The notes under the pieces: model-generated | Seen by the model: only the letters and a program-made list of their open reading frames with translations | Databases searched by the model: none | What the model was told of the DNA's origin: nothing | Part shown: positions 1,031-103,167 of the stretch, piece by piece | How positions within the stretch are numbered: position 1 is the stretch's first letter | How the letters are laid out: each line of letters opens with the position of its first letter | Position numbers and translations under genes: made by a program | Assembly: GCA_951406725.2 (NCBI GenBank) | Contig: OX597823.1 | Location: 26,184,001-26,308,000 of the forward strand | Direction: 5' to 3' | From: Octopus vulgaris | Lineage: Eukaryota | Length of the DNA stretch: 124,000 nucleotides

Positions 1031-1089
1031 CATACATATATATATAGTTAATCCAAACATGAAAACACAAAGAGAAAACACAACGCTTT

Positions 1090-1945
1090 GTGCTATCAGC
1101 ATGCAAAACTAAATGCAATACCCAATAAATACACTGGACCTGGAGGGATTGCAATCCCAGAAGCACAATCAGTGCAAGACCTGGGCATTTACATGAGTAA
1201 TGATTCAACCTTTCATGTGCATGTTGCTAAATTGGCAATGAAATGTAGGCAGCTGACCAGATGGATTCTTAGAACCTTTAGGACAAGAGACCAGGAAACC
1301 ATGATGATCCTCTGGAGGACATGTGTCCTAAGCCACTTTGACTATTGCTCTCAGCTATGGTCACCAATCAGTGTCAAATTAATCTCAGAACTTGAGGCAA
1401 TCCAACGAAGCTACACGAAGAAGATAGCCTCAATGCAGCATATAAGCTATTGGGAAAGACTCAAAAGATTAAGACTCTATTCTTTAGAGCGTAGGTGAGA
1501 AAGATATGCCTAATATACATCTGGAAGATCCTGGAAGGACTTGTCCCTAACTTTGGCATTGAGAGTTACACAAATACTAGAACTGGGTGCCACTGCATAG
1601 TGCCAAGGACTCCAAATTTGCCATCAAGATGTAGGACAAGATACTGCAATAACCTGGGCTTCAGAGGTCCATGGCTCTTCAATATCCTGCTGAAGGACCT
1701 GAGAGACCTGCATGGGGTGGATGCAGATGTCTTTAAAATAAAGCTGGACCTCTTCCTGTCAGGTGTCCCAGATGAACCAACTTCATGGCAGGAGGTGCAG
1801 ATGAGAGCAGCTGCATCAAACTCTCTCATGCACCAAATGTCAATTGTTAAAAAGCATTCGTGAAGTAAAATCATGTAGCAACACCGAATGGCAGTGCCCC
1901 AGCATGGCCACAGCTCGTGAGCTGAAACTAGATAAAAAAAAATAA
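1090..1945 (+). mobile_element. 5'-truncated CR1/L2-group LINE (RT C-terminus and 3' UTR)
   Basis: Translates DLGIYMS...DYCSQLWSP...LEAIQRSYTKKI...YWERLKRLRLYSLERR*ERY...YIWKILEG...FKIKLDLFL, typical of the CR1-group RT thumb region. One TGA (1496-1498) and one frameshift. Confidence 0.85.
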
Positions 1946-8424: not shown

Positions 8425-8904
8425 CTTCCCTTGAAGGCTTACAGGTGCCGGTGCCATGTAAAAAGCACTTGTGTTGGTGCCACATAAAAGCGTCCATGCT
8501 GGTGCAAAGTAAAAGCACCCGTGCTGGTGTCACATACAAGTTCCCATGGCAGTTCCACATAAAGAACTTGTGCCCATGCCCCACAACTGCATCTGTACTC
8601 GTGCCACATTAAAGTATCCATGCATCTGCTATGTATAAGTGCCTGTGCTAATGTCATGTAAAAATGCCTGTATTGATGTCACATAAAAGTGACTGTGCCA
8701 CAGCCAAGTAAACATGCCCATGCTGGTGTCATACAAAATCACTGGTGCTGGTGCCATGTGAAACGCACATAGTACATTCTGTAAAGTAGTTGACATTAAA
8801 AAGTGCATCAAACCATAGAAAACATGCCAAAATAGAGCAACTCCCCAGCTGGCCAATTCCTGTCAAACTATCCAACCCATGGCAACACAGAAAGTGGATG
8901 TCAA

Positions 8905-9375
8905 GTGGCCGTGTGGTAAGAAGCTTGCCTCCTAATCACATGGTTCTGGGTTCAGTTGCACTGTGTGGCACCTTCGGTCCTCTCGACTGAGAGAGGAGGA
9001 ACACAGCAGACATACCTGCATGTATGGATGGACACAATTTTACTTAGCTTGACATGTCTTCTCTAGCACAGCAATCCACTACTATAGCCTCAAGCTGACC
9101 AAAGCCTTGTGAGTGGATTTGGTAGATGGAAACTGAAAGAAGCCTGTCATATATATATATATATATTTGTGTTTGTGTCTGTACTCGTCCCTCCACTATT
9201 GCTTGACAACTGATGTTGGTGTATTTACATCCCTGTAACTTAACAGTTCAGCAAAAGACACCGATAGAATAAGTACAGGGCTTACAAAGAATAAGTCCAG
9301 GGGTTAATTTCTTCAACTAAAAGCAGTGCTCCAGCATGGTCACAGTCAAAATGACCGAAACAAGTAAAAGAATAA
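8905..9375 (+). mobile_element. SINE S1 copy interrupted by a 99-bp inverted RTE segment
   Basis: Head ends ggcacctt at ~8975; body resumes ..tactatagcc at ~9080. Confidence 0.75.
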
Positions 9376-10310: not shown

Positions 10311-12149
10311 GTATTTATGTATATATACATATATGCATATATGTGTTTATATTTATGTTGTGCTCTTTCATGTCCAGTAACCTTATAGTTCAACAAATGG
10401 AGAATAATAAAATAAGTACCAGACTTGAATGACCACTGGGGTTATCAAGTTCCTTAAAACTGGTGCCCCATCATGGCCACAATTCACATAACTAGTAAAA
10501 TAATAAAAGTACATATATCTATAAAGTATGTGTAAAAATTCTCTAAAAATGCATTGATTTTGGTATTTCTTTATTCTTGCTTTTTGGCTGTTTTCCATTA
10601 AAACATATTTCTCTAACCCCAGGAGGAGATTATTTCAACATAGTTATTTCATTTGTGGGCAATCCATTCTCTCATGTGATGCTAAAATAAAATAACAAAT
10701 AAATAATAACTATATAACTAAATAATAATAATAATGAAACGAAAAATGTAACTATAATTAAATTATAAATTAATAAACATGTATATATATTATTTCTTTA
10801 TGAAATTAGTACAAAAAAATTAACATTTTGAAGTTAATTAACATTATCTAATATTAACTTTTGCTAAAAAGGCAAAGAGAAAAGATGAAAATTTTTATCC
10901 TTTTTTTGAAAATTTACTTCCTCCCTAAAGTATAATTGTCATTTTTCAGTTCCTTTAATAGACAGCAAACATTAAAATTAATTTTTTTGGAGGAATTAAT
11001 TATAATTTTATAGAAAATTATTCCTTTTTTCTCTTTTACTCTCTTGAAATAAACCAAGAAGTGAGAATTTTATTACCTTATAAAAGAAATTGTAATAATT
11101 TCTTTATCTAAAAACTGATCCCTAAATTATTTCATAAATAAATGTCGTGCTTGTTCCCTAAAAGCCTTTCCTTTCCATAGTTCCATTTACCGAAAGTAAA
11201 TACAAAAGTAAAATAGAACTGAGGAAAGAAAATGATTGAGGGAAAGAGAAAGAAAGAGTGAAGAAAGAATTCATAGAGAAAGAGAAAAGAAAAAGTGTTA
11301 GAGAGAATGGGAAAGAAAGAAAAAACAAGGGGAAAGATATGATAGAAAGAATGTGTTAGAGAGAGCGAGAGAGAGAAAGAAATGATAGAGAGAAAGTGAA
11401 AAAAGAAATGATAGAGAGAAAATGAAAAAGAAATAAGAGAGAGAGAAAGAGAGAGAGAGAGAGAATGAGAGAGAAATAAATAAATGATAGAGAGGGGAAG
11501 TGAGAGAGCGAGAAAAATTAAATACATCGATGGAAAAACAACAAAAAGCTGTTATGAAATTATTTCATTTTCAGTTTAGAACAAAAGGTAGCGGCGTTTC
11601 ACGGGTGTATATATATAAATATATACATATGTATATATATATATATGTATATGTAAATGTATATGTATGTATGTACATGGTGTCGGTCACTAGTATAAAC
11701 TTATATTATAAAACAATCAACTAACACTTCCATTTAATAAGTTTATTGTGTGTAAAAATTCTACACTGAATTTAATATAAAACATATGTACACACATTTG
11801 TATATATGAATATATGTCTATGTAGTGTTGTTTTTCTTTCAATTCCATACTTTAATTATTCTTTCTTCAATAACATCGAACTCACACTCAACGTCTATTT
11901 ATAGTTAATTATAAATTTACTACAAGATAAACTGAAGATCTCAATTTAAGGACCAAATTCGCATTTAAGTGCTTTCATGACGTACATTGATAATAATAAT
12001 AATAATAAAAAAACAACATGAAGACAAATTTATTCATAGCCCATCCCATATCCTTTCTTTGGTTCGTTTTTCTTTTTATTCATCATCAATTTCCTTACGA
12101 ATGTTGTTATCCAAGAAAACCGAATGTTTCTAGAAGAACGTAAAGCCCC

Positions 12150-21830: not shown

Positions 21831-22154
21831 GGAAAGAATTGCAACTCCTTTAAAACTCTTGTGATGAGCATACTGTTAGGGTGCTGTGTTCATCATAATC
21901 ATTGTCATTTAACATCCGTTTTCCATGCTGGCATGGGTTAGACTACATGACTGAAAATTGGTAAGCTAGGAGGCTGCACCAGGTTCCAATCTAATTTGGC
22001 ATGGTTTCTAAGGTTGGATGTCCTTCCTAACGCCAACCACTCTGCTAGCACAGGTGCCAGTTGATCTTAACAAATATTGTTAGTGAAAAACCATAGGAAA
22101 AAGTATGTGTGGTTGTATTTGCATAATATATTTCAGCAAATATAATTCACTTCC

Positions 22155-22419
22155 AGTTCTACATTTAAGAGATAAGGAATTATGTACATTATTTACATTT
22201 GACAGATATTTGTCCTCATCTTGTTTGTTGTTAACACGTGTCGGCTGATATACCCTCCAGCCTTCATCAGGTGTCTTGGGGGAAATTTCAAACCTGGGTT
22301 TTCATTCCTAAGGTATTTTTTGATATTATTATCATTATTATTCTTTAGGTCACTGCCTGGAATTGAACTCGGAATCTTGGGGTTAGTAGCCCGCACGTTT
22401 AACCACAATGCCATATGCC
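22155..22419 (-). mobile_element. tRNA-headed short element carrying a degenerate hammerhead ribozyme (Penelope-terminal-repeat/SINE-like)
   Basis: Reverse complement begins ggcatatggcattgtggttaa...aagattccgagttcaattccaggc (A/B boxes, tRNA-Arg-like). It contains gacac-CTGATGA-a-ggctg(gagggtatat)cagcc-GACACG-tgtt at 22233-22275. Confidence 0.75.
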
Positions 22420-22439
22420 TGATTAAGAATAAGAATAAT

Positions 22440-23010
22440 ATTAATAATGACTGCCCTGATGCAGTACCAGGCAGTGGCTCTCATGGCTTCTGAACTTAAC
22501 TGATTGGAAGTGTTATCATGTACCTTGTTTTGTCTTGGTATAAATGATGGGCTACAGCAGTTATTCTGCTCAATACCACAGATTTGCTTGTCAGTTGTTT
22601 GACCATAACCAGTTGACCATGTCCCTTAGTAGCTGATGATATGTGCATCTCTGATCACGAGCAGAAGTAGTGGGGGAGCATCATAGCCATGTGTTGAGAG
22701 GGATATTTGGAGTTTGAATAATTCACCTCTGGAAACATGGGTATTTCATTCAACATCCTTAAACAACCTTTATTCAGGGACCTTTTGAGTGGGATGGGTT
22801 ACTTGACCAAAAGAAAATTCTAACTGGGCCCCACCTACAAGGTCATGTGCTGTTTATCTTGATATGAGATCACCATGTCGCGCACATATGGTTGTGATGC
22901 ATGTGTCTAGTGTACCCTTATCAGATGGGTAGTCATGATGGGTACACTAGGCTTCGTATATTTTACCCCAGTGTCACTTTGATGGCATGCACTGCTATCT
23001 CACTCAATAA
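22440..23010. mobile_element. ~570-bp unclassified interspersed repeat bounded by TAA-like runs
   Basis: Non-coding block between AAT-rich junctions, which I recall as an abundant octopus repeat. Not classifiable from this window. Confidence 0.4.
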
Positions 23011-23013
23011 TAA

Positions 23014-23141
23014 CATTGAAATGAGAACCCAGGTTTTAAATTTCCCTTAGACACCTGATGAAGGCTGGAGGGTATATCAGCCGAAACACTGTGTTAACAA
23101 CAAACAAGATGAGGACAAATATCCATCAAATGTAAATAATG
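23014..23141 (+). mobile_element. 3' half of the same element (inverted relative to 22155-22310) with hammerhead core
   Basis: Stem I gacac 23050-54, CTGATGA 23055-61, stem II ggctg/cagcc 23063-67/23078-82, GAAA 23083-86, stem I partner gtgtt 23091-95. Confidence 0.75.
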
Positions 23142-23751
23142 TATAATTCACTTCCGTTTCCATAAAACAATGTCAGCATGATGGAATTGAAGAGTGTTTT
23201 GTGTTACTTTCAGTATTTTCCTCCAATTGGAAAAGCTGTGTCTGTAAATGAACATCTTAGGTGTTTGTTTCTCATCTAATTAATGTTGAGTCAACTAGAG
23301 CTGTTAATTAGGCTTGTAGGTTCTTGATTTTTGGGGAATCATATATTTTACTTATGTAATAAAACGACTGTTTTGATACCATCACACTCTTACAAGAACT
23401 CACCTACCTGTCACTTGGTTATGACCTATCACTACTTTTGCTCTTCTGAACCCCACTCCTCACCTAAACCAGCTCCATGCACCTGTCTTTCTATCTCCTG
23501 TCAATGTTATTTGTTCTCTATCTTTATGCTTAACTGTCTCTTTTCCCAGACCTTCCCCTCCCTCTGTTTCAGTACCCCACTCTCTTACTAATCTGCTAGA
23601 ACAACTTTTTCTTTTTTTCTTTCCTACCACTAACTTACATGAACACCAGCTGAACAATAACTACACACTTTATTCCCCCTACTCTCTCCACCACCCCCTG
23701 TCTGCCTGACTCTCTCTCTCTTACACACTCCCAGCTTGGATGGGCTTAGAG

Positions 23752-24042: not shown

Positions 24043-27000
24043 AACTTGAGGGTCCATGGGCACTGGTTCTCTTGTTTTGATTAACCAGTACACAATATGT
24101 ATCCATGATTAAGTATTTTTTAAAATGTTTTTTTATTTTAAGCTGAAGGTGGTCAGAACAAATCAACGTGATTGTCTTTCATAGACTAAAACAAGGTCTT
24201 CAGTTCAATAAAACAGCATTTTTAATGTCCATATATAAAGTTAGTGGTGCTAACTGCCTGAAGTCTACCATAATCAAGTAATGAATTAAATCCAGATTTG
24301 AGACCTTGATTTCTTTACATAAGACAAATCAGTTTGGTAGTTGGTCTACTATTGTCATTAGATATTATTCTTTAACTTGTTTCAGTCATTTGACTGCTGC
24401 CATGCTAGAGCACTGCCTTTAGTTGAACAAATCAACCCCAGGACTTACTCTTTGTAAGCCTAGTACTTATTCTATCAGTCTCTTTTTGCTGAACCACTTA
24501 AACACACCAACAGCAGTTGTCAAGTGATGGTGGTGGGACAAACATGGACACACAAATACATACATATATAAGACTTTGATCAGCCCTAGGTTGTGGCAGC
24601 AGACACATGCCCAAAGTGCCACATAGTGGGATTGAACCTGGAACCATGTGGTTGGGAAGCAAGCTACTTACCATACAGCCACGTCTGTATCTATATACTC
24701 TTTTACTTGTTTCAGTCCTTTGACTGCGGCCATGCTGGAGCACCGCCTTTAAATATATGTTGATATATTTATCATATTTATCATACAGGATCGATGAAAC
24801 TAAATCTATGTGACTTTGTAACTTTATAGTGTCAACAAGGTTAAGTATGGTTGCTTTGAATAAATATAAGTTAATATGGGGACCAGATTTTGGCCTGTTT
24901 AAATTTTAAAAGGTTAAATGTTTGGAAAGCTCTCCTATTTAGAAAGCAAATTATGAAGAAAACTAGTGTGTGACAAATGATAAATTAACTTTATCTGATT
25001 ATATTGATGGTAAAGTATTTTCAAAGATCCTAGTTTCTCAGGTCCTTGATTATAGAATACAGGTGGAGGCACTGGTTCTGGGGACATTTCTACAAGGTTT
25101 TGATGCCATATTTGGCAAGTAATATTTTAGTAATATTTAACTTGCATGCACATCATCATAGACATTGTTTTCAAGTTTTATTTTTCCATTTTCGTATGAG
25201 TTTGATGTGTCTGCAAAGCAGTGTGTTGCTACTACTCTTCATCTTGTTCCGTTTCCTGTGTGAGGTTCAACACCATTTCCTTTCTCATGCCTTCTCAATT
25301 TTATCTTCAATACAGTTGCCTTCTGTTGTCATCATCATATTTTCTCTCTGTAAACTTTGTTTTAGTTTGACAATATTGTGACAGCAACATGGGGTTACTA
25401 TTCATAACAGAATCTTTCATACGATGTGCACATATACAATGCATACCTATGACTAAGAGTACATGTCACTTGCTTTTCTGGGCTTTACTCAAAGCTTTCC
25501 AATTGTTGGTCTCCTGTTTCTCTTACAAGTGTCATTTTAACTCAATAAAGCACATTATTTTATATATTATTCACATATTTGGTGTGTGTCTATCTAACTA
25601 TATCCATCCATCCATCTATATATCATCATCATCATCATTTAACGTCCACTTTCCATGCTAGCATGGGTTGGACGATTTGACTGAGGACTGGCGAACCAGA
25701 TGGCTGCACCAGGCTCCAATCTTGATCTGGCAGAGTTTCTACAGCTGGATGCCCTTCCTAATGCCATATATATATATATATATATATATAAGGGAAAAAG
25801 AAAATGGGAATTCATGAGATTCTTTATTCAGAAACACTATGATCGTTTCAACCCATCATGTACAGGTACCTTGCAGGTGAGCCGCTGTACAAACAGCTGT
25901 CATGCATTGTAGGTGCTGATGCATTTCCTCAGGTGATTTTTCAAAAAGTACCACATTTTTTTTTATTTGCTGTTTTGCTCATCCCTATAACAATACATTT
26001 TGGTAATCATAGTTTACAATACGTCAAGTGAAAAGAGTTTTGTGAATTCCATTTTCTTTCTCTCATTTTTTACAAACTCTACAGACATGAAGGAATTCCT
26101 GAAGTAAATCCAGTGGTGTATACCTCCATACATCAGGGAACTGAATACTGTGAAGGGGCTTTAAACAGCATGCTATACGGTGTATATCTGAATATAAAAT
26201 TATATATTCGCATGTATGCATGCATATATATATGAGAGAGCGATTGATATATTTGCAAAAACAACTTCTACTGACAATTAGTCAAGAGCAAGCTTAGTTT
26301 GTGACATGGTTACCAAGCTAAATGGTGTACCACTGATCACAACTATAGTTTCTTGGTGCAGCAGCCACACTGGTATGTCAGACATCTTGTCTTGTTGGAA
26401 TTTCAAACTGTCTGTGTTGGTAATTGATAGACAGCTTAAGGTCAGATTACTTACATTGCAATAAAGATGTGGCTTTGTTTGACTAATGGAAAAGCTATTT
26501 TATTTAGTTTGAAGTTTTAGCTATTCTCTTTTTTTCTTCATTCACTTTAAAGATCTTTCAACCTCTGTCAGTACTAAAGTAACAAATATTAACATCATTA
26601 TTATTATTATTATTATTATTATAGTTGTGGAATGGCAGAATTATTAGTGTCAGAGAAATGCAATGTGGTATTTGTTCAGGCTCTTTATATTTCCCTTCAA
26701 ATCCCTGCTGGGGTCAACTTTGCCTTTCATCTTTTCGGGGTTGATAAAATAAAATACCAGTTAAGTGCTGATGTTGATATAATTGTCTCTCCTCTCCTCT
26801 CCAGATTTCAAGCCTTACACCTATGTTAGACACAATTGTTATTATTATTAAGCCATGATAATTTGGTAGAATTTTTTGAGCATTGGAAAAAAATACCTTG
26901 ACATATGTCCTGGCTGTTTAGTTCTAAGATCAACTTTGCTTTTCATTTCTTCAGGTTCAGTAACATGAAGGAACCAGTCAAGTATTGGGGTCGGGTTAAT

Positions 27001-27568: not shown

Positions 27569-28305
27569 CATCATCATCATCATCGTCGTTTAACGTCCGT
27601 TCTCCATGCTAGCATGGGTTGGACGGTTCGACCGGGGATCTGGGAAGCCAGAAGGCTGCACCAGGCTCCAGTCTTATCTGGCAGTGTTTCTACAGCTGGA
27701 TGCCCTTCCTAATGCCAACCACTCCGTGAGTGTAGTGGGTGCTTTTTACGTGCCACCTGCACAGGTGCCAGGCGAGGCTGGCAATGGCCACGGTCGGATT
27801 GGTGTATTTTATGTGCCACCGGCACGGAAGCCAGACGAGGCGGTGCTGGCATCGGCTACGAGTCGGATGGTGCTTTTTACGTACCACCAGACCAGGGATC
27901 CTGGCTGGTTCAATTCGATTTCGATTTCGCTTGCCCCAACATGTCTTCGCAAGCAAGGGGGTTGGCATGGGTGCCTGTTGTATGGTCAGATTGGTGTATT
28001 TTACGTGCCACCGGCACGGAAGCCAGTGGAGGCGGCACTGGCATCAGCCACGAGTCGGATAGTGCTTTTTACGTACCACCAGACCAGGGAACCTGGCTGG
28101 TTCGATTCGATTTCGCTTGCCCCAACATGTCTTCGCAAGCAAGGGGGTTGGCATGGGTGCCTGTCGTACAGTCAGATTTGTGTATTTTACGTGCCACCGG
28201 CACAGAAGCCAGTGGAGGCGGCGCTGGCATCGGCCACGAGTCGGATAGTGCTTTTTACGTACCACCAGACCAGGGATCCTGGCTGGTTCAATTCGATTTT
28301 GACTT
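27569..28305 (-). mobile_element. RTE 3'-UTR repeat with internal ~190-bp tandem expansion (about 2.7 units)
   Basis: (CAT)n tail at 27569; units start near 27792, 27984 and 28170; CpG-rich. Confidence 0.75.
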
Positions 28306-28344
28306 ATATATATATATATATATGTATATATGTAAATATGTATT

Positions 28345-28377
<33 letters not shown>

Positions 28378-28380
28378 AAG

Positions 28381-28635
28381 GGTAAAGACCCCCTTCGGTC
28401 ATGAATGACCATGGGATTGCACCTAGAAAGTTACCCTCCTAGACACAAGTCCGGGCAAGGTTGTTTATAGAAGACCAGCAGTCGCCCATGCATACCAGCC
28501 TCCCCTCTCCACGCCACCAGTGTTACCCAAGGGAAAGACAAAGGTCGATACAGCTTGGCACCAGTGACGTCGCAACTCATATCTACAGCTGAGTGAACTG
28601 GAGCAACGTGAAATAAAGTGCCTTGCTCAAGAACA
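28381..28635 (-). mobile_element. SINE sharing the S3 core but with a different tail (S4)
   Basis: Core gttgctccagttcactcagctg plus tail ggtcattcatgaccgaaggggtctttacc; tail also present at 52150-52306 (+). Confidence 0.65.
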
Positions 28636-33666: not shown

Positions 33667-33978
33667 ATTTCATTTTATCTAGTTTCAGCTCACGAGCTGT
33701 GGCAATGCTGGGGCACTGCCATTCGGTGTTGCTACATGATTTTACTTCACGAATGCTTTTTAGCAATTGACATTTGGTGCATGAGAGAGTTTGATGCAGC
33801 TGCTCTCATCTGCACCTCCTGCCGTGAAGTTGGTTCATCTGGGACACCTGACAGGAAGAGGTCCAACTTTATTTTAAAGACATCTGCATCCACCCCATGC
33901 AGGTCTCTCAGGTCCTTCGGGAGGATATTGAAGAGCTGTGGACCTCTGAAGCCCAGGCTATCACAGTATCTTGTCCTA
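33667..33978 (-). mobile_element. Short 3' fragment of the same CR1-group LINE, inserted at (TA)n
   Basis: Reverse complement is nearly identical to ~1635-1940 (RTRYCDSLGFRGPQLFNILPKDLRDLHGVDADVFKIKLDLFLSGVPDEP). Confidence 0.85.
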
Positions 33979-34129
33979 TATATATATATATATATATACA
34001 GCCGAAATTGCGAGGATGATCTGGTTCTTGACTGAAGATTGAAGGCTTCAAATGTCCCATCCTTGTTTTTTGTATCGTCTCTTCTAAATGTTTTGCGTTC
34101 TTGTCCCAGTTTGTATTTTTTTACACATA

Positions 34130-34530
34130 TCATCATCATCATCATCGTTTAACGTCCGTTTTCCGCGCTAGCACGGGTTGGACGGTTCGACCGGGGTCTG
34201 GGAAGCCAGGGGCCGCTCCAGGCTCCAGTCTGATCTGGTAGAGTTTCTACGGCTGGATGCCCTTCCTAACGCCAACCACTCCGTGAGTGGAGTGGGTGCT
34301 TTTTACGTGCCACCTGCACAGGGGCCGGGGGGTCCAGCATCAGTCACGATCGGTTCGAGCTTTTAACGTGCCAGCGGCACGGGGGCAATGGGATCCGGGG
34401 TACTTTGAATGGGTAGGGGCTATGTGGAATTGCTGCAGAAAGCAGCCCGGGTCTTTGCAGTCACAGCATATCTCCAGAGATCTCGGTCCTTCGCCATTGC
34501 CTCAGTGAGGCCCAATGCTCTGAGGTCATA
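34130..34530 (-). mobile_element. Young, heavily 5'-truncated RTE LINE 3' end inserted in (TA)n
   Basis: [22 protein letters not shown] (RTE C-terminus) runs into the ggcatccagccgtagaaac...ggacgttaaacg(ATG)n 3' UTR; CpGs largely intact. Confidence 0.8.
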
Positions 34531-37804: not shown

Positions 37805-37953
37805 CAGTTCTATATTTAAGAGATGAGGAATTATGTACATTATTGACATTTTGAACCTGGGTTCTCATTCCTAAGGTTATTTGTCGATGTTGTTGTTTGG
37901 CTTGGAATCTTGGGGTTAGTAGCCTGCACTCTTAACCACTACGCTATATGCCC
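37805..37953 (-). mobile_element. Internally deleted copy of the tRNA-headed element, directly after the Penelope ORF
   Basis: Same head (gcgtagtggttaagagtgcaggctactaaccccaagattcc) and tail (ccttaggaatgagaacccagg...aatgtacataattcctcatctcttaaatatagaact). The hammerhead segment is missing. Confidence 0.75.
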
Positions 37954-37982
37954 ATGGGCAATTATGGAGTGAGTTTTAGGGC

Positions 37983-38560
37983 TTATAAATCAAATATTTT
38001 CCTATTCTTCTTTGATACCGGTTCCCATATGCTACTCGTATCTACACTCAGTTTGCTTAGGGGGTTGTTGTGTCCTAGCATATGTGCTGCTGCTTTTAGT
38101 TGTATTTTTTAGTGGTGGTCTCTGTCTATTATTTTAACTTCATCCCACAGGGGGAGGTGGTCTCCATTTTACCATACATGATCAGCTATACCCGATTTAT
38201 GAATATCTCCCCATGTCACAGCTTTGCGATGTTCCTCTACCTTTATTTTGAAGGGGCGGCATGTTTTGCCTTTGTATAACCTACTACAGCTGCATGGGAT
38301 GGAGTACACACAGTCTTTGGTCATATTCTCTTCTATTGGTGGTTTTACTCGAAGAAGATATTTGCGAAGTGTTGTATTACTCTTGAATACTCTCCTGATG
38401 TCATATAAGCCACATATCTTTTGTATCTTTTTGGAGAGGCATGTTTTAGGCACTGAGCAATCCCACTCTTTATGGATGGGGGGACCTGAAGTTGAGGTAT
38501 TGTCCAATGAAGGGTGGCTTGCGGTATACGGATGTCCTGAATCCATACTTGGTGTGTGTT
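37983..38560 (-). mobile_element. Penelope-like element: GIY-YIG endonuclease C-terminal fragment
   Basis: CVYSIPCSCSRLYKGKTCRPFKIKVEEHRKAV..GDIHKSGIADHVW...WDEVKIIDR... matches the PLE GIY-YIG pattern (VYxIPCxCxxxYxGxTxR...EH...SxIAxH). Stop codon at 37983-37985. Confidence 0.85.
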
Positions 38561-38864
38561 ATTAATACGTCCAGGAATGCTAGCTGATTGTCTTTTTTTT
38601 TGTAAATAATGTAAAGTTATGAAAGTTACAAAAAACCTTATTGCCTAATATAATTAGGTTAAATGAGATGCAGTTTGGTTTATGTGCCAGGGAGTAAGGC
38701 AGTTGCAGGAGAAATGTTCAACAAAAAATAAGCTGTTATACTTGGCAACTGCCAGATTGGAAAAAGCCTTAAACAGGGTCCATCATTCATCTGGTGGTTT
38801 CTGAGGAAGCTGAGGGTAGACGAATGGGTTTTGAGAGCCATACAAGCCATTTAAAGGAGTGCTA

Positions 38865-41619: not shown

Positions 41620-42470
41620 AATGTCCATTGTCCATGCTGGCATGCTGGAAGGCTGCACCAGACTCCAGTCTGATTTGGCATGGTTTTCTACGGCTGGATG
41701 CCCTTCCTAACACCAACCACTCCGAGTGTAATAGGTGCTTTTGCGTGCTACTGGCATGGGTGCCATTTGTGTGACACCGGGGTGTGTTTACGTGCCAGTT
41801 TGCATGACACTGGTATCTGCCACAACTGCGGTTTTGCTTGGCTTGATGGGTCTTTTCAAGCACGGCATAATACTAAAGGATTTGGTCATTGCCTCCATGA
41901 GGCCCAATGCTTGAAACTCAGCCACTTTACTTCCGTGAGGCCCAACATTCAAAAGATGTTCTTTATGTGCCACCAGCATGGGTGCACTTGGCTTGACGGA
42001 TCCTCTCAAGCACAGCACATCACCAAAAGTCTCAGTTACCAGTCATTACCTCTGTGAGGCTCAAAGTTCGAAGCTCATGCTTCACCACCTCGTCCTATGT
42101 CTTCTTGGTTCTACCTCTACCACAGGTTCCCTCCACAGTTAGAGATTGGCACTTCTTTACACAGCTGTCCTCATCCATACGCATCACATGGCCAAACCAA
42201 CACAGTCGTCTCTCTTGCACACCACATCTGATTCCTCTCATGCCTCTTAAGATGCTTACTAGCTGTCGAACATGCACACTGACATTGCACACCCAGTGAA
42301 GCATACTGGCTTCATTTCTTTCAAGCCTATGCATATCCTCAGCTGTCATAGCCCATGTTTCACTGCCATGCAGCATAACTATTCGCAGACAGGCATCAAG
42401 CAATCTGCCTTTCACTCTGAGAAAGAGGCACTTTGTTGCCAGCAGCGGTAGCTCTCTGAACTTTGCACAC
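41620..42470 (-). mobile_element. RTE-clade LINE 3' end with 3' UTR
   Basis: KFRELPLL...RVKGRLLDACLRIVMLHGSETW...RRLCWFGHVMRMDEDSCVKKC...GRGRTKKTW, then the ggcatccagccgtagaaa...(GAT)n 3' UTR. Confidence 0.85.
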
Positions 42471-42689
42471 ACACAAAATAGGTGCAGGTATGGCTGTGTG
42501 GTTAAGAAGCTTGTTTCCTGACCATGGGGTCTGGAGTTCAATCTCAATGCACGGTACAGCACCAACCCTAATATGCTAAAGCCTTCTGAGTAGATTTGAT
42601 GAACAAATTAAAAGAAACCTACCCATAGTGTGTAGTTGAGTGAAAAGTTTTTTGTATTTCAAGCTTTAATAGTTCAAACAAATCACGTA

Positions 42690-43965: not shown

Positions 43966-44115
43966 ACAGGCTTCTTTCAGTTTTTGTCTACGAAATCCAC
44001 TTACAAGGCTTTGGTCAGCCTGAGACTATAGCAGAAGACACTTGCCCAAGTGGGACTGAACCCAGAACCATGTGGTTGGTAAGCAAGCTACTTACCACAC
44101 AGCCATTCCTGTGCC
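43662..44115 (-). mobile_element. SINE S1 full-length copy
   Basis: Same head, body and tail; internal (CA)n. Confidence 0.8.
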
Positions 44116-76530: not shown

Positions 76531-79500
76531 TATATACATATATATATATATACATACACACATATGCACATACGCATGTGTATGGGAGACAGCTTTGTTC
76601 ATAAAGATGTTGGATAAAAAAAAACTCACTTGTGCTCCAGTTTCCTTTTTTTTATTAAAAATTTTCATATTTTTTTCAAGCTGTAAAGAATCTTTAATAA
76701 AATAGGGAAAAATCTAGAGCACAGTTAAGTTATCTAACACAACACACATATAAGTGTTTGCATATGTATGTACACATATAATATATATGTATAACATATA
76801 CATATGCACACACACACACACATGCATACAATTTTTTAATTGTCCATTTTATCTATTCCAATACGGGTGGGAGTTTTCTATTTATTTTCACTTTTGCGCA
76901 AAAGTGGACATTTGCATATGTTTTGGAACCATATTTACAGCTGGATGCCTTTACTACTACTAACTGTATGTAACGTTGTTGTGGAAAATAGTAGTATCCG
77001 CCAGGCAGCCTGAAGTAACAAAATGCTTGAAACTGTTAGGTTGGAGTTGTGACCATCTGGCCAATATAATGGCTCTCTAAACCCCACTTCAACTGTGGTT
77101 CTTGTATTATACATTATCTCCCACCCAACATAACTCATTAACAGTAATAATGTTATGTGTGTCCCTCCTGTCTCTCTCTGTCTCTCTCTCTCTGTCTCTC
77201 TCTCTCTTTCCCTCTCAACTAGCTCATTACTAGTGCTAGCACACTATATTAGAAATGGTGAATGAAATGACCACAAGATTTTGTTGAGGTGTCCATTATG
77301 TCTAATGGGGTAGGTGATCATGTGACTAGAGCGTTGTGTTACACAATGTTTCATATCCCCCAAGTGTTGTGAGTCCTCTTCATTCTCAGGTGTTTCATTG
77401 TGTAATTGTTAGGCAAGGCAGTTAATTCAGTGCCCCAATTCACCTGCCAGCAGCTGGGGAAGAGTGGTATGAAATCATATCTTTTGACTGTTTTCATTCA
77501 ATAGATAGTTCCCCTGTATAAAAGTAAGGTGGGTATTCATCTCTCATCCCATTAACATCACAGAGCCCAAAGATAAAGGGGTTTATTCTTTTTATGGAGG
77601 GAGGGGGGTACTTTGTGGTTTATGAAACCATTTTATCAACATATCACTGTAAAGGTTATAATAAAGTTATTACACCAGCTGCAGTCCTATATTCAAAAGG
77701 ACCAAATACTGGTTGAATTGAAACAATGTCATATTGGATACCCTTTTATGACCAAAATACCTAGTTATATCCACCTGAAGAATATTTACATTGAAAATGA
77801 TTTTATCTTGTCTGTATGTAACTTTCAAACATTTTCTACGTTTGATCCAATTTATACTGTTTTTTTTTTGAATTTATGGATTACTTTTCATTGTTTTTAT
77901 TGTTTATATTTTATTTATTTTGAATGTTGAATAAAAGAAAAAATTCATTGTTCCATTCCCCACTCCCACTCCAATTGTAATCTTTGTTTCTGAGATGGTG
78001 AGTTTGATGTAAACACTATTTAGTAGTATCCAACTAGATACTTTACTGTATTTAGTTTCGTCACTTTACGTGTTATTCAGATTCTGCCAGTGTGTGGCAG
78101 ATATGTTTTAATAATTAAATAATGAATTTATTTTTATTTATTTATTTTTTTTGCTATACTCTCCTACCTACCTCTAATTGTACTTCACCTAATGTCTGTA
78201 TCAGAAGTAATAGTATTATTCATATTGGTAGAATTGGTAGAGAACTGAGCTAAATACCTTGCCATATTTAGTTACATTCCTTAAAATGCTGTGTTCTGTT
78301 TGTGTTGAGGTTAACTATACCTTTCAGTAAAATTAATACCAGTTACAAACTTGGGTCCAATTCATTTAACTATTTGTCTTCCTTACAAATTTGTGGCTTT
78401 GAGCCAATGTTGGAATTTATTATTTATTTATTAGCTGAGAGGCTAAGAATTTTACTTTGCAACCCCATGGTCCCAGGTCTGATCCTACTGCATAGCAATT
78501 TGGGCAAGTATCTTCATCTGTAGCCATGTGTGTCTTTATATCTGTGTAAGCCAGTTTCAGGTTGCATGCTCTATTTGTCAAAGCATAACTCAGAAATTTG
78601 ATAAAGTAGGAAACCTGACTGAAATAAGTACTGGGGCCAATATGATTGACTAAAATCACCCTTGGAGGCAGGCCCTTGTATGGCTGCAGTCCAATGACTG
78701 AAACCAGTAAAAAAAAAATACACATGCAGTTACAGATTTGGAGGAATTTTTGAAAGTTAATATTTATTTTCTTTGATAACGATGAGTAATGATAAGGGTT
78801 TCTAATATAAACACAAGGCCTGAAATTTTGTGGGGAAGGGTAAGTCAGTAAAATCGACCCAGTATTTGACTGGTGCTTTATTTTATTGATACCTGGATGA
78901 GGGACACTGAAAGGCAAAGCTAACTATGATGTGATTTGAACTCAGACTGTAAAGAGCTGGAACAAATATAGTGAGGTATTTTGTCTAACGCTCTAATGAT
79001 TTTTGCCAATCTGTCACCCTAAATAAATAATAAGTTTTCAACTTCTATCTGAATCAGTTGCATATATATCATTTTAAATATGTTTCTCAATAACAATTTT
79101 TTGCTTAGATTGTTTTAGACATCACAGCTAAGGCCATATTGAAGCACTACCATGATATGCAAACGTCCTAAACTTCTGAATTCAACTAACAACCTTTTAT
79201 GATACAAGTCTCTTAATTGTTTAACTGTATACATCTCCCTCCACCTCCACCACCGCAATCACTGAGCTTCTACAGTTACTGCTTTACAGTAATTAATTCT
79301 GTCGTACTGTATCCTGGGTTCAAATTCCACTGGGGTAGGGTGCGTCAATTGATAAATGAGCATTAGTTATGTACAGAGGTCAGTTTCATTGACTATTTCC
79401 TCTCTACAGACTTGCAGTCCTGTGCCAATGTTGAGAATTCAACATTTCAAAAGAAAGTTGTTTTATCTCTTGATCTAGAAATATTCAATTGTCTTAGTTC

Positions 79501-100212: not shown

Positions 100213-100375
100213 GACGGGCTTCTTTCAGTTTCTATCTACCAAATCTACTCACAAGGCTTTGGTTGGCCCTGAGGCTATAGTAGAAGACACTTGCCCAAGG
100301 TGCCACGCAGTGGGACTGAGCCCGGAACCATGTGGTTGGTAAGCAAGCTACTTACCACACAGCCACTCCTATGCC
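99946..100375 (-). mobile_element. Major tRNA-derived SINE (family S1), young full-length copy
   Basis: Head gtggctgtgtggtaagtagcttgcttaccaaccacatggttccgggctcagtccc, body ccttgggcaagtgtcttc, internal microsatellite, tail ccagcatggccacagtcaaatgactg..acaagtaaaagagt. Confidence 0.85.
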
Positions 100376-101298
100376 TACGTACATAAAATATTTTTGATAG
100401 TTTATACAATTCCTAGTAAAATTTAATTATAAAAATACAGGGTTTTTTTTTAATATATATTGATCAGATTGGAACCTGGTACAGCCTCCTGGCTTGCCAG
100501 TCCTCAGTCAAACTGTCCAACCCATGCCAGCATGGAAAGTGGACATTAAACGATGATGATAATGATGATGATGATGATTGAATGGCTATGGAGACCCCAA
100601 AGAGTAAAATAGGAATGAAAGGGGGCCCATAAGCAAAACATGGTTGAGAACCAGTGATCTATGTTATGGAAGCATTTCATTCTTGAAAATCTTGCTGTAA
100701 CATAGAATTCTATAATGCATAACCTATTCCATTGATTCCATGTTATGTGGAAGTCCAGGAACAAGGAAATCAATGGCAAAATATCTCTTATGTTACCAAA
100801 TTCCATGTTGTGGCAGGATTTCTAAGCATGCAACATTTCCATAATACAGGTGATAGCTGTGCTTGGATGGCCACAAATGGAATGTTCTTGATGCTTGGTC
100901 AGCTCTATCAGAATTGGTTTGGGGCTAAACAATAGCATCAGTCACAACACACATCTGCTTGAAGTGACACAGTCGAGGCAGGTTACTTATTCTTGATTTG
101001 AAATTTAATAATTATTTCTAAGAGTTTGTTGATTAACTAATGTTTAAGTATGGAGGTTTCTCTCATAAATTCTATTTATTCAGTACACAGCATTTGGACA
101101 AGTGGGGCCTCTATTGAGGTTTTATTAATGATTTGCTTTGTTCTGTTTTTCTCTCCACCTTCTCACCTCTTTATTTGATGCTTTGATACCCTTTCTCCTC
101201 TGTTTTTCTTCTTTTATACCTATCTCTCCTCCTGCTTCCCTCTGCCTCCATCTCTCTGACTATCTGTCTCTCTATCTTTGTCTGACTATCTGTCAGCC

Positions 101299-102969: not shown

Positions 102970-103144
102970 CATACATATATATGACGGGCTTCTTTCAGTT
103001 TCTATCTACCAAATCCACTCACAAGGCTTTGATCGGCCCTAGGCTATAGTAGAAGATGCTTGCCCAAAGTGCCACACAGTAGGACTGAACCTGGAACCGT
103101 GTGGTTGGTAAGCAAGCTACTTACCACACAGCCACTCCTGTGCC
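102697..103144 (-). mobile_element. SINE S1 full-length copy
   Basis: High similarity to 99946-100375. Confidence 0.85.
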
Positions 103145-103167
103145 TATAAAAATAAATGTTCTTTCTC

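What the first reader, a model, noticed from the sequence alone, without database searches (positions are those of the whole stretch)
23047..23100. tRNA-headed short element carrying a Penelope-type minimal hammerhead ribozyme
Seen: gacac-CTGATGA-A-ggctg(gagggtatat)cagcc-GAAA-cact-gtgtt. This has both catalytic boxes in type I order, a perfect 5-bp stem II, and stem I (gacac/gtgtt). The second copy (22233-22275, minus) keeps ACG after the GAxA box. Combining the two copies suggests a consensus GAAACG(T)T, the loopless palindromic ACGU stem III of minimal type I hammerheads. The same element has a tRNA-Arg-like A/B-box head about 80-150 nt upstream (22348-22419). Established: minimal hammerheads that cleave as dimers occur in Penelope terminal repeats, and hammerhead-bearing short repeats exist in schistosomes and newts. 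An extra A between A9 and G10.1 is a known tolerated variant. Inference: this may be a Pol III-transcribed, self-cleaving, retrozyme/SINE-like family in a cephalopod. Both copies here have core mutations, so they are probably individually inactive.
Basis: partly seen in the sequence, partly recalled or inferred. Interest (0 to 1): 0.88.

Follow-up and report, generated by a model that had tools for sequence, protein, structure and literature searches.

The report
Decayed Penelope-element hammerhead ribozyme copies
The motif is real: two mutated, inverted copies of a minimal hammerhead ribozyme from the end region of a Penelope-like jumping gene in the common octopus, which makes it a known kind of element and not a new tRNA-headed SINE.

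Summary
The sequence is as described: 23050-23095(+) and 22233-22275(-) are 88%-identical inverted copies carrying CTGATGA, a bulged A, a 5-6 bp stem II, GAAA/GACA and a GACAC/GTGTT stem I. No Rfam hammerhead model matches, but those models also miss an intact relative.

I fetched relatives through a neighbouring retrotransposon ORF fragment: one Octopus vulgaris locus and eight loci from an unidentified ENA assembly. They give 15 near-complete copies with the consensus GACAC-CUGAUGA-A-GGCUGG...UCAGCC-GAAACGUU|GUGUU.

- The catalytic core is at least 90% conserved, and only the free position N7 varies.
- Stems II and I show compensatory changes.
- The bulged A and the G10.1-C11.1 pair, hallmarks of Penelope-type minimal hammerheads, are present.

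In the window's third copy and in seven other loci, the tRNA-like segment and hammerhead module follow directly after the end of a reverse-transcriptase/endonuclease ORF. The element is therefore the terminal non-coding region (pseudo-LTR) of a Penelope-like element.

The window pair shows Penelope insertion architecture: inverted arms, a roughly 34-nt tail on one arm only, and a 13-bp target duplication. Both window hammerheads are mutated at helix III and the cleavage site, so they are dead. The "independent Pol III SINE/retrozyme" reading is only weakly supported. This is a new member of a known kind.

The parts
23050..23095 (+). Hammerhead relic, copy 2. Helix I 5' strand GACAC, core CUGAUGA, bulged A, helix II GGCUGG/UCAGCC with an 8-nt loop, GAAA, then ACAC-U in place of ACGU-U, then GUGUU.
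   Evidence: Sequence. Alignment A2. Model R1 scores it 65.8 bits, but it is a training sequence. A15.1-U16.1 and C15.2-G16.2 are both destroyed relative to the family consensus.
22233..22275 (-). Hammerhead relic, copy 1. Same helices I and II, but GAAACGUU is replaced by GACAC, meaning A14 changed to C plus a 3-nt deletion at helix III and the cleavage site.
   Evidence: R1 scores it 53.9 bits.
22157..22425 (-). Short Penelope-derived copy 1. It runs from the tRNA-like head through an A-rich linker and the hammerhead module to the complete 3' end (...TAGAACTGGA). The ORF-linker sequence is not found upstream of it.
   Evidence: Its upstream flank does not align with the conserved ORF-to-head linker seen in copy 3 and L001.
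22348..22419 (-). tRNA-like segment of copy 1, with a degraded A box and a B-box-like GAGTTCAATTCC.
   Evidence: Rfam tRNA model 15.6 bits, E=7.9, below the gathering score of 29. ARAGORN finds nothing. The 5' half is conserved across both lineages (invariant columns in A3).
22157..22190 (-). A 3' 'tail' extension of about 34 nt that is present on this arm only and absent from copy 2.
   Evidence: Copy 1 and copy 3 share ...ACATAATTCCTTATCTCTTAAATGTAGAACTG, while copy 2 stops at ...AAATAATGT. A one-sided 30-40 bp tail is a Penelope-like element signature (PMC8557442; PMC11167929).
23006..23136 (+). Copy 2, the 5'-truncated inverted partner: linker end, hammerhead module and the short 3' end without the tail extension.
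22144..22156 (+). Left copy of the 13-nt direct repeat ATAATTCACTTCC, read as the target-site duplication of the whole inverted composite.
   Evidence: Sequence. The longest exact direct match between the two 71-nt flanks is 14 nt, against at most 12 nt in 2000 shuffles.
23137..23149 (+). Right copy of the direct repeat ATAATTCACTTCC. Its first 7 nt coincide with the element's own ATAATTC (microhomology).
   Evidence: The analogous repeat ATAATTTTAAA flanks the composite in L001.
22478..23005 (.). An unassigned 528 bp lying between the inverted arms. A possible head remnant, CCAGGCAGTGGC, sits at 22466-22477.
   Evidence: No similarity to anything else in the window or in the fetched loci by blastn or tblastx.
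37805..38590 (-). Copy 3, a 5'-truncated Penelope-like element. It holds the end of the RT domain, an endonuclease-like domain with stops and a frameshift, the ORF end, a linker, the tRNA-like head (about 37957-37901) and the tail. The 71-nt hammerhead module is deleted between AAAT microhomologies.
   Evidence: It is 82.7% identical over 492 nt to O. vulgaris L001 10058-10543, running from the ORF into the module start. The ORF piece finds relatives. Profile relatives carry RVT_1 N-terminal of this domain.
77340..77394 (-). A weak match to the family covariance model, possibly a very decayed hammerhead of a related element. It reads CTGAGAA...GAAACATTGTGT.
   Evidence: R1 scores it 23.9 bits, E=0.0037. 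Sequence. The core is not intact.

Best explanation
The motif and its inverted partner are two decayed copies of a minimal type I hammerhead ribozyme that lacks a helix III hairpin. The motif belongs to the terminal non-coding region (pseudo-LTR) of a canonical endonuclease-bearing Penelope-like retrotransposon (PLE) family of the common octopus, Octopus vulgaris or O. sinensis.

The order along the element is: ORF end, conserved linker, tRNA-like segment, A-rich linker, hammerhead, then about 55-90 nt to two alternative DNA 3' ends.

The block 22144-23149 is best read as one PLE-type insertion (inferred from its architecture). It consists of a short copy in one orientation, a 5'-truncated copy in the other, an extra tail of about 34 nt on one arm only, and a 13-bp target duplication.

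How intact copies should work (inferred from the family, not shown here):
- The RNA forms helix I (GACAC/GUGUU) and helix II (GGCUGG/UCAGCC, with a bulged A after A9).
- Two hammerhead copies pair through the palindromic A15.1-C-G-U16.1 to build helix III.
- The RNA is cut after GUU. The cut is probably assisted by the element's own protein, as shown for the Anolis element PAc.

Both window copies have lost helix III and the cleavage site, and copy 1 has also lost A14. They cannot cleave.
For: Family consensus and conservation:
- Fifteen near-complete copies from two lineages give GACAC/AACAC-CUGA(U/A)GA-A-GGC(U/C)GG...UC(A/G)GCC-GAAACGU(U/A)-GUG...
- Core positions C3 U4 G5 A6 G8 A9 G12 A13 A14 A15.1 are invariant or at least 90% conserved. 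The only varying core position is N7, the one that is free in hammerheads.

Covariation:
- Helix II is 92% paired, with U-A/U-G/C-G at one pair and G-C/A-U at another.
- Helix I shows A-U/U-A.
- 82% of cells are paired, against 15-49% when partners are slid.
- The covariation score is 0.151 against 0.095 +/- 0.014, reached by 0 of 500 shuffles.

Class hallmarks listed in PMC4209133 are all present: a nucleotide between A9 and G10.1, G10.1-C11.1, palindromic 15.2-16.2, a short helix I and a long helix II.

Physical linkage to a PLE ORF:
- Window copy 3 matches L001 over 492 contiguous nt at 82.7%.
- Six ENA loci are contiguous from the endonuclease domain to the tail.
- The endonuclease-like profile has 3777 relatives. 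One 545-aa relative has RVT_1 at residues 71-276 and this domain at 403-508.

Insertion architecture matches published PLE features. These are inverted 5'-truncated copies, a one-sided 30-40 bp tail, AT-rich targets, and cleavage and extension of both DNA strands (PMC8557442; PMC11167929). The same pattern recurs in L001 and L006.
Against: - No cleavage, RNA-end or expression data were available.
- Pfam's GIY-YIG model does not detect the endonuclease-like domain, and the AlphaFold model was too poor to use (pLDDT 51). PLE identity therefore rests on RT-plus-C-terminal-domain architecture, motifs seen by eye and insertion structure.
- No full-length element was recovered.
- Covariation comes from about three sub-lineages, so there are few independent events.
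- Helix I is only 3 bp in most copies of the second lineage.
- Minimal PLE hammerheads cleave poorly in vitro (PMC4209133).
- In the Anolis element, cleavage was not needed for insertion in vitro (PMC11167929), so the biological role is open.
- The organism behind the ENA assembly ERZ21867824 is unknown.
- The 528 bp between the two window arms is unexplained.
Confidence: 0.85

Rival explanations
1. An independent, Pol III-transcribed, tRNA-headed SINE or retrozyme-like family carrying a hammerhead. On this view, its adjacency to PLE ORFs reflects shared tails or secondary insertions.
For: - Window copy 1 begins at the tRNA-like head without the ORF linker upstream.
- L001 has a head-start junction at 12062-12080.
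- The A box (TAGCGTAGTGG in copy 3) and the B box (GGTTCAATCC in the ENA lineage) are conserved across lineages.
- There is no TTTT run in the sense strand of copy 1.
- Schistosome Sm-alpha shows that tRNA-derived short elements with hammerheads exist (PMC2770079).
- A 129-nt tandem dimer with two hammerheads occurs in L007.
Against: - Head and module are contiguous with the ORF end and a conserved linker in window copy 3, in L001 and in six ENA loci. This is not expected from repeated independent SINE insertions.
- tRNA model scores are sub-threshold (15.6 bits) or absent, and ARAGORN finds none.
- In the ENA lineage, 0 of 7 short copies start at the tRNA-like segment and 5 of 7 start just upstream of the hammerhead.
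- There is no tandem arrangement in the window.
- The abundant tRNA-derived SINE of this window is a different family.
Confidence: 0.1
2. The conserved module is mainly a protein-recognition or reverse-transcription-initiation RNA element of the PLE. On this view, its hammerhead-like core no longer catalyses cleavage, or never did so usefully.
For: - The about 45 nt downstream of the hammerhead (AACAA.AAAGATGA.GACAA.A.TCC) are as conserved as the core.
- Minimal PLE hammerheads have low activity in vitro.
- In PAc, hammerhead mutants insert normally and no RNA-seq ends map to the cut site.
- Short copies retain the whole hammerhead instead of starting at the cut site.
Against: - The variation pattern is what a hammerhead predicts: only N7 is free, H17 is U or A and never G in intact copies, helices show compensatory pairs, and ACGU is palindromic.
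- The PAc hammerhead does cleave when its protein is present, with C3G/G8C rescue.
Confidence: 0.1
3. A chance resemblance: a CTGATGA box next to an ordinary hairpin and a GAAA inside a repeat.
For: - The loose pattern is expected 0.42 times per window.
- No Rfam hammerhead hit was found.
- Folding energy is no better than shuffles.
Against: - The strict pattern is expected 0.017 times per window.
- The motif is conserved with compensatory changes in a second lineage whose surrounding DNA is only about 73% identical.
- Rfam models also miss the intact copy, so that negative is uninformative.
Confidence: 0.02

Closest known systems
Minimal hammerhead ribozymes (min-HHR) of Penelope-like elements (Cervera & de la Pena 2014, PMC4209133)
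   Same: - Type I topology with no helix III hairpin.
- A15.1-U16.1 with a palindromic 15.2-16.2 (ACGU).
- An unpaired nucleotide between A9 and G10.1.
- G10.1-C11.1, a short helix I (3-5 bp) and a longish helix II (6 bp).
- Located in the terminal repeat region of a PLE.
- Sequence varies between copies, with compensatory changes.
   Different: - Here a tRNA-like segment lies about 75-220 nt upstream within the same non-coding region. I found no report of that in the papers searched.
- Helix II is 6 bp, against 7-8 bp in the schistosome examples.
- Activity was not tested.
PAc (Poseidon, Anolis carolinensis) hammerhead and 'tail' (Frangieh et al. 2024, PMC11167929)
   Same: - The hammerhead sits a few tens of nucleotides upstream of two alternative ends, which define a 30-40 nt tail seen on only some ends.
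- Targets are AT-rich.
- Both DNA strands are usable, which explains inverted arms.
   Different: - In PAc the hammerhead overlaps the ORF start at the pLTR-ORF junction. Here it is seen downstream of the ORF stop and a tRNA-like segment. No full-length or tandem octopus copy was recovered to see the junction.
- Protein-assisted cleavage is shown for PAc only.
Sm-alpha / Sj-alpha SINE-like elements of schistosomes (PMC2770079 and references there)
   Same: A short, tRNA-related head plus a hammerhead motif in a dispersed short element.
   Different: - To my knowledge Sm-alpha carries a canonical hammerhead with a helix III hairpin that Rfam-type searches find. This was not tested here.
- The octopus motif is the minimal variant and is physically part of an ORF-bearing PLE.
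Non-LTR retrozymes of animals (PMC7229834; bioRxiv 10.64898/2026.07.22.740005)
   Same: Non-autonomous hammerhead-bearing sequences related to PLE pseudo-LTRs. One 129-nt tandem dimer with two hammerheads occurs in the ENA lineage (L007).
   Different: - Retrozymes are tandem arrays of about 170-400 bp with canonical type I hammerheads, and they are expressed as circular RNAs.
- The window holds an inverted pair, not a tandem array, and the hammerhead is the minimal variant.
- No RNA data were available.
Rfam Hammerhead_1 (RF00163) and other Rfam hammerhead models
   Same: The same catalytic core boxes.
   Different: None of the Rfam models matches, even at E up to 10 on 96 nt. They also fail on the intact O. 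vulgaris copy.

Membership tests
Hammerhead ribozyme, minimal type I variant of PLEs | Conserved core C3 U4 G5 A6 N7 G8 A9 ... G12 A13 A14 | tested here: met
   The family alignment A2 shows these positions invariant or at least 90% conserved, with only N7 varying. Window copy 2 keeps all of them. Window copy 1 has A14 changed to C.
Hammerhead ribozyme, minimal type I variant of PLEs | Helix II closed by G10.1-C11.1, supported by covariation | tested here: met
   G-C at 10.1/11.1 in 14 of 15 copies. Helix II is 92% paired, and two of its pairs show double-sided changes.
Hammerhead ribozyme, minimal type I variant of PLEs | Unpaired nucleotide between A9 and G10.1 | tested here: met
   An A is present in 15 of 15 copies. 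The feature is listed as a hallmark in PMC4209133.
Hammerhead ribozyme, minimal type I variant of PLEs | A15.1-U16.1 with palindromic 15.2/16.2, no loop 3, followed by H17 (not G) | tested here: met
   Met for the family: 11 of 15 copies have ACGU, 12 keep the C-G pair and 14 keep the A-U pair, and H17 is U in 9 or A in 2 of the ACGU copies. Not met in either window copy, which read ACAC-U and a deleted site.
Hammerhead ribozyme, minimal type I variant of PLEs | Helix I pairing across the cleavage site | tested here: met
   5 bp in Octopus (GACAC/GUGUU), 3 bp in most ENA copies and 4 bp with an A-U to U-A swap in one sub-lineage. Overall 68% of cells are paired.
Hammerhead ribozyme, minimal type I variant of PLEs | Site-specific self-cleavage, as a dimer or with protein assistance | not testable with these tools
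   This needs in vitro transcription and cleavage assays. RNAcofold did not predict the ACGU/ACGU helix and is not informative for this.
Rfam hammerhead families (Hammerhead_1, _3, _II, HH9, HH10) | Covariance-model score at or above the gathering score | tested here: not met
   No hit at the gathering score. No hit at E up to 10 on 1.7 kb or on 96 nt. No hit on the intact L001 copy either.
Penelope-like element (canonical, endonuclease-bearing) | Single ORF with a reverse transcriptase followed by a C-terminal GIY-YIG endonuclease | tested here: inconclusive
   Only 5'-truncated copies were found. The endonuclease-like profile finds 3777 relatives. P0025 has RVT_1 at 71-276 and this domain at 403-508, and P0125 is similar. 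Pfam GIY-YIG is not detected. The VYSIPCxCG..Y.GET...R...EH motif is seen by eye. The AF2 model is unusable.
Penelope-like element (canonical, endonuclease-bearing) | Insertion architecture: 5' truncation, tandem or inverted partial copies, and a 30-40 bp tail at one end only | tested here: met
   Seen in window 22144-23149, L001 9965-10645, L006 560-800 and the L007 tandem. The features are as described in PMC8557442 and PMC11167929.
Penelope-like element (canonical, endonuclease-bearing) | Hammerhead motif in the terminal non-coding repeat | tested here: met
   The module lies about 300-500 nt downstream of the endonuclease-domain ORF piece in L001, L002, L004, L005, L006, L007 and L008. The flanks of the deleted module are in the same place in window copy 3.
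tRNA-derived SINE (Pol III) | tRNA-related head with A and B boxes | tested here: inconclusive
   A-box and B-box-like strings are conserved across lineages. The tRNA model gives 15.6 bits, below the gathering score of 29, in Octopus and no hit in the ENA copy. ARAGORN finds none.
tRNA-derived SINE (Pol III) | A self-contained short unit whose copies start at the head and that is not part of a longer autonomous element | tested here: not met
   The head is contiguous with the ORF end in 8 loci. Only window copy 1 and one L001 fragment start at the head. None of 7 short ENA copies does.
Non-LTR retrozyme | Tandem repeats of a short unit, each with a canonical type I hammerhead; circular RNA | tested here: not met
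   The window copies are inverted and 730 bp apart, and the hammerhead is the minimal variant. One 129-nt tandem dimer exists in L007 only. Circular RNA is not testable here.

The most novel reading that the evidence does not exclude
The terminal repeat of this cephalopod Penelope-like element carries a functional tRNA-like Pol III promoter or processing signal upstream of its minimal hammerhead. The element would then spin off short, head-to-tail, SINE-like copies such as window copy 1, which the PLE machinery mobilises. This would be a direct link between PLE pseudo-LTRs and tRNA-headed hammerhead elements of the Sm-alpha type.
Probability: 0.25. Interest if true: 0.6.

Novelty: new member of a known kind. 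Interest (0 to 1): 0.38.

Why it matters
Minimal hammerheads in Penelope-like elements are already described as massive and widespread in metazoan genomes. Finding them in octopus, in decayed form, is expected and adds an annotated example, not a new principle.

Two things are useful:
- Standard Rfam models miss this class completely. Octopus genome annotations will not flag these motifs, and the small covariance model built here, or a min-HHR descriptor, would.
- In this family the conserved order (ORF end, tRNA-like segment, hammerhead, two alternative 3' ends) offers a tractable case for two open questions. One is what the hammerhead does in the PLE cycle. The other is whether tRNA-headed hammerhead SINE-like elements are PLE derivatives.

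Tried and rejected
- Rfam at the gathering score on the whole window, and at E up to 10 on 1.7 kb and on 96 nt, gave no hammerhead. This was shown to be uninformative because the intact L001 copy is also missed.
- Exact-pattern scans of viral, metagenome and prokaryote-genome contigs with 22-28-mers of the motif gave 0 hits.
- A protein search with the antisense ORF through the element gave 0 hits.
- A full-text search for sequence strings of the element gave 0 papers.
- Pfam on the endonuclease-like pieces gave no GIY-YIG hit. A PDB profile search found nothing meaningful. The AlphaFold2 model had pLDDT 51, so no fold search was run.
- RNAcofold of two copies predicts domain-swapped dimers, not the ACGU helix III. 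It is not informative for hammerhead cores.
- Folding energies are no better than shuffles.
- I considered that the inverted pair might be the terminal inverted repeats of a DNA transposon. I rejected this because the left arm continues into a tail shared with copy 3, and the arms are unequal in the PLE-specific way.
- I considered L1-type twin priming. The published PLE behaviour, extension of both strands and internal initiation, fits better.
- I considered that the head belongs to the window's abundant tRNA-derived SINE. I rejected this because that family has a different sequence.
- The 528 bp between the arms matched nothing.
Full report
**1. Observation**

On the + strand, 23050-23095 reads gacac-CTGATGA-a-ggctgg-agggtata-tcagcc-GAAA-cact-gtgtt. 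The reverse complement of 22233-22275 is the same up to the GAAA box, where it reads GACAC-gtgtt.

The two lie in 147-nt segments that are 87.8% identical and inverted relative to each other: 22177-22320 minus and 23006-23149 plus. The tRNA-like stretch at 22348-22419(-) is also there, but only weakly tRNA-like. Rfam's tRNA model gives 15.6 bits (E 7.9, gathering score 29), and ARAGORN calls nothing.

In Markov-1 simulated sequence:
- the strict pattern (CTGATGA, 0-1 nt, a hairpin of at least 5 Watson-Crick pairs, GAAA) is expected 0.017 times per window;
- a loose version is expected 0.42 times per window.

One window therefore cannot decide the matter. No Rfam hammerhead model matches at any threshold tried.

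**2. Copies in the window**

Sensitive searches find three copies of the surrounding element.
- Copy 1 (22157-22425, minus) runs from the tRNA-like head through an A-rich linker and the hammerhead module to a 3' end ...TAGAACTGGA.
- Copy 2 (23006-23136, plus) lacks the head and the last 34 nt or so.
- Copy 3 (about 37805-37957, minus) has head and tail but lacks 71 nt containing the hammerhead module. The deletion lies between AAAT microhomologies.

Immediately upstream of copy 3, on the same strand, is a degenerate ORF ending ...IWEPVSKKNRK. It has a VYSIPCSCS.LYKGKTCRP...EEHRKAV...IADHVW block and, before that, the end of a reverse-transcriptase domain (FLDVLI...TSVYRKP..GQYLNF). By my knowledge of the family, this looks like the C-terminus of a Penelope-like element (PLE).

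**3. Relatives from elsewhere**

Direct DNA-pattern scans of the public collections and a search with an ORF through the element found nothing. A search with the 87-aa endonuclease-like piece found nine proteins. One is from Octopus vulgaris and eight are from a single ENA assembly (ERZ21867824, organism unknown). I fetched the DNA around all nine.

The window itself is from the common octopus. Its 690-aa zinc-finger ORF (70131-72203) is encoded exactly in GCA_951406725.2, the assembly that holds the O. vulgaris hit, and in GCA_006345805.1.

In O. vulgaris locus L001, the ORF end, a linker, the tRNA-like head and the hammerhead module follow one another exactly as in window copy 3. The match is 82.7% identity over 492 contiguous nt, running from the ORF into the module.

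In the ENA lineage, six loci are contiguous from the endonuclease-like domain through the ORF stop, linker, tRNA-like segment and hammerhead to the tail. The "tRNA-headed short element" is therefore the terminal non-coding region of an ORF-bearing retrotransposon.

**4. The hammerhead at family level**

Nineteen module copies were found, and fifteen are near-complete.
- Octopus consensus: GACAC-CUGAUGA-A-GGCUGG-(8-10 nt)-UCAGCC-GAAACGUU-GUGUU.
- Main ENA sub-family: AACAC-CUGAAGA-A-GGCCGG-...-UCGGCC-GAAACGUU-GUGGA.
- Second ENA sub-family: AUCAC-CUGAAGA-A-GGCCAG-...-UUGGCC-GAAACGUA-GUGAA.

One O. vulgaris copy (L001 11878-11925, minus) is a flawless example.

Conservation:
- All core positions are invariant or at least 90% conserved.
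- The only varying core position is N7 (U or A), the position that is free in hammerheads.
- H17 is U or A.
- The bulged A after A9 is present in 15 of 15 copies.

Pair counts:
- Helix II is 92% paired, with U-A/U-G/C-G at one pair and G-C/A-U at another.
- Helix I shows A-U/U-A.
- Overall, 82% of cells are paired, against 15-49% for slid partners.
- The covariation score is 0.151 against 0.095 +/- 0.014 in shuffles, reached by 0 of 500.

The caveat is that only about three sub-lineages contribute, so independent events are few.

These are the features Cervera and de la Pena list for PLE minimal hammerheads (PMC4209133): an unpaired nucleotide between 9 and 10.1, G10.1-C11.1, palindromic 15.2-16.2, a short helix I and a long helix II.

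A covariance model built from the alignment recovers all copies and adds one weak hit in the window (77340-77394 minus, 23.9 bits) with a broken core. Rfam's hammerhead models miss even the flawless copy, so their silence on the window says nothing.

**5. State of the window copies**

Against GAAACGUU|GUGUU, copy 2 reads GAAACACU|GUGUU. Two transitions destroy both the C15.2-G16.2 and A15.1-U16.1 pairs. Copy 1 reads GACAC---GUGUU, meaning A14 changed to C plus a 3-nt deletion that removes the site or puts a G at position 17. Copy 3 has lost the module. All three are dead.

**6. Penelope-like identity and insertion architecture**

A profile of the endonuclease-like domain finds 3777 relatives in the representative library. 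The longest top hit (545 aa) has Pfam RVT_1 at residues 71-276 and this domain at 403-508, and another hit is similar.

Pfam's GIY-YIG model does not detect the domain, a PDB profile search was empty and the structure model was unusable. The endonuclease fold is therefore inferred from motifs only.

The insertion structure is diagnostic.
- The block 22144-23149 is flanked by a 13-nt direct repeat, ATAATTCACTTCC. The longest exact match between the flanks is 14 nt, against at most 12 nt in 2000 shuffles.
- The block contains two arms in opposite orientation.
- Only one arm carries the extra 34-nt tail.
- The same pattern recurs in L001 (an inverted tail fragment abutting a 5'-truncated copy, flanked by ATAATTTTAAA) and in L006.
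- L007 has a 129-nt direct tandem with two hammerheads.

Published work describes these features for PLEs. Craig et al. report 5' truncation, partial tandems, an adjacent inverted 5'-truncated copy and a 30-40 bp tail at one end (PMC8557442). Frangieh et al. show that a purified PLE protein cuts and extends both DNA strands at AT-rich sites and starts reverse transcription at two internal sites whose spacing is the tail (PMC11167929).

The 528 bp between the window arms matches nothing I could reach.

**7. The tRNA-like segment**

Its 5' half, including an A-box string (TAGCGTAGTGG in copy 3), is conserved in both lineages. So is a B-box string (GGTTCAATCC in the ENA lineage). No copy scores as a tRNA.

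Window copy 1 starts at this segment, and a head-start junction occurs in L001. In the ENA lineage, 5 of 7 short copies start 7-20 nt upstream of the hammerhead and none at the tRNA-like segment.

A Pol III promoter or an RNase P-type processing signal is possible but untested. The window's abundant tRNA-derived SINE is a different family.

**8. Mechanism**

Shown here:
- a conserved, covarying minimal hammerhead motif that lies about 55-90 nt upstream of the element's two alternative DNA ends;
- physical linkage of that motif to a PLE ORF.

Inferred from the family:
- In transcripts holding two copies, or between two RNAs, the palindromic ACGU of two hammerheads pairs to form helix III.
- The RNA is then cut after GUU.
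- Cleavage is probably helped by the element's protein, as in the Anolis element. There, hammerhead mutants still inserted in vitro, so the role in the cycle is open.

**9. Comparison and novelty**

This is a member of the known class of PLE minimal hammerheads. PLEs and Rfam-type hammerhead hits are already reported in cephalopods (PMC6962438; PMC8557442).

The nearest short-element analogues are schistosome Sm-alpha (tRNA-derived plus hammerhead; PMC2770079) and animal non-LTR retrozymes, recently argued to derive from PLE pseudo-LTRs. The window element meets neither definition. Its hammerhead is the minimal variant, the copies are not tandem, and the unit is part of an ORF-bearing element.

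The one feature I did not find described is the conserved tRNA-like segment inside the PLE terminal region.

**10. Verdict**

The hammerhead inference is supported. The independent SINE/retrozyme reading is only weakly supported. The finding is a new member of a known kind, of moderate-to-low interest.

Noticed in passing
window 92230-92302(-), 44050-44115(-), 100308-100381(-), 120876-120942(-), 8894-8961(+), 24620-24692(-), 103078-103146(-), 42479-42547(+): At least eight copies of a different, abundant tRNA-derived SINE. Its consensus runs roughly AGGCACAGGAGTGGCTGTGTGGTAAGTAGCTTGC...GGTTCAGTCCCACTG...GACCAAAGCCTTGTGAGTGGATTTGGTAGACGGAAACTGAAAGAAGCC. Copies usually end in GT/AT microsatellites. 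Apart from generic tRNA likeness, it is unrelated to the Penelope terminal region.
   Followed up: partly
window 70131-72203 (+): An uninterrupted 690-aa ORF with several C2H2-type zinc-finger matches, all below Pfam thresholds. It is encoded identically in assemblies GCA_951406725.2 and GCA_006345805.1, which places the window in the common octopus.
   Followed up: partly
L007 9036-9257 (-), ENA assembly ERZ21867824: Two direct tandem units of 129 nt, each with an almost intact minimal hammerhead. They are joined where the tail end (...AGACAAC) meets the sequence just upstream of the next hammerhead. This is a retrozyme-like mini-tandem next to a 5'-truncated PLE copy.
   Followed up: partly
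L002-L008 (ENA lineage), reference coordinates of L005 10001-10800: Five of seven short copies begin 7-20 nt upstream of the hammerhead core (reference positions 640-656). None begins at the predicted cleavage site or at the tRNA-like segment. This looks like a preferred 5' end that no explanation here accounts for.
   Followed up: partly
window 22478-23005: 528 bp between the two inverted arms with no match in the window or in the fetched loci. It may be a later insertion or captured sequence. A 12-nt head-like string, CCAGGCAGTGGC, sits just before it at 22466-22477.
   Followed up: partly
window 37845-37884 (-): Copy 3 lacks exactly the 71-nt hammerhead module. The breakpoints fall at AAAT repeats (...CCCAGGTTCA|AAATGTCAATAATG...), which suggests a microhomology-mediated deletion.
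   Followed up: yes
window 1088-1863(+), 33747-34145(-), 42095-42565(-), 113817-114785(+): Fragments of non-LTR (LINE-type) reverse-transcriptase C-terminal regions. The ORF at 113817-114785 has a weak zf-RVT match. Two fragments (1495-1863 and 33747-34145) share the same C-terminal peptide.
   Followed up: no
window 27606-28385 (+): An ORF whose translation repeats a block of about 60 aa three times (GVFYVPPA.KP.EA.LASATSR.VLFTYHQTR.PGWF.SIS...). This indicates a tandem DNA repeat of about 200 bp. It has no Pfam match.
   Followed up: no
L001 11975-12300 and 12620-12800; L002 9900-9985: PLE copies and fragments are embedded in or flanked by long microsatellites, (AAT)n and (TTG)n in Octopus and (AAAG)n and (GATA)n in the ENA lineage. 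This is consistent with the microsatellite insertion bias reported for PLEs.
   Followed up: no
L003 1080-1391 (+): A mariner/Tc1-like transposase C-terminal fragment (PPYSPDLAPCDFWLFPKL...) sits immediately upstream of a PLE fragment in the ENA assembly.
   Followed up: no
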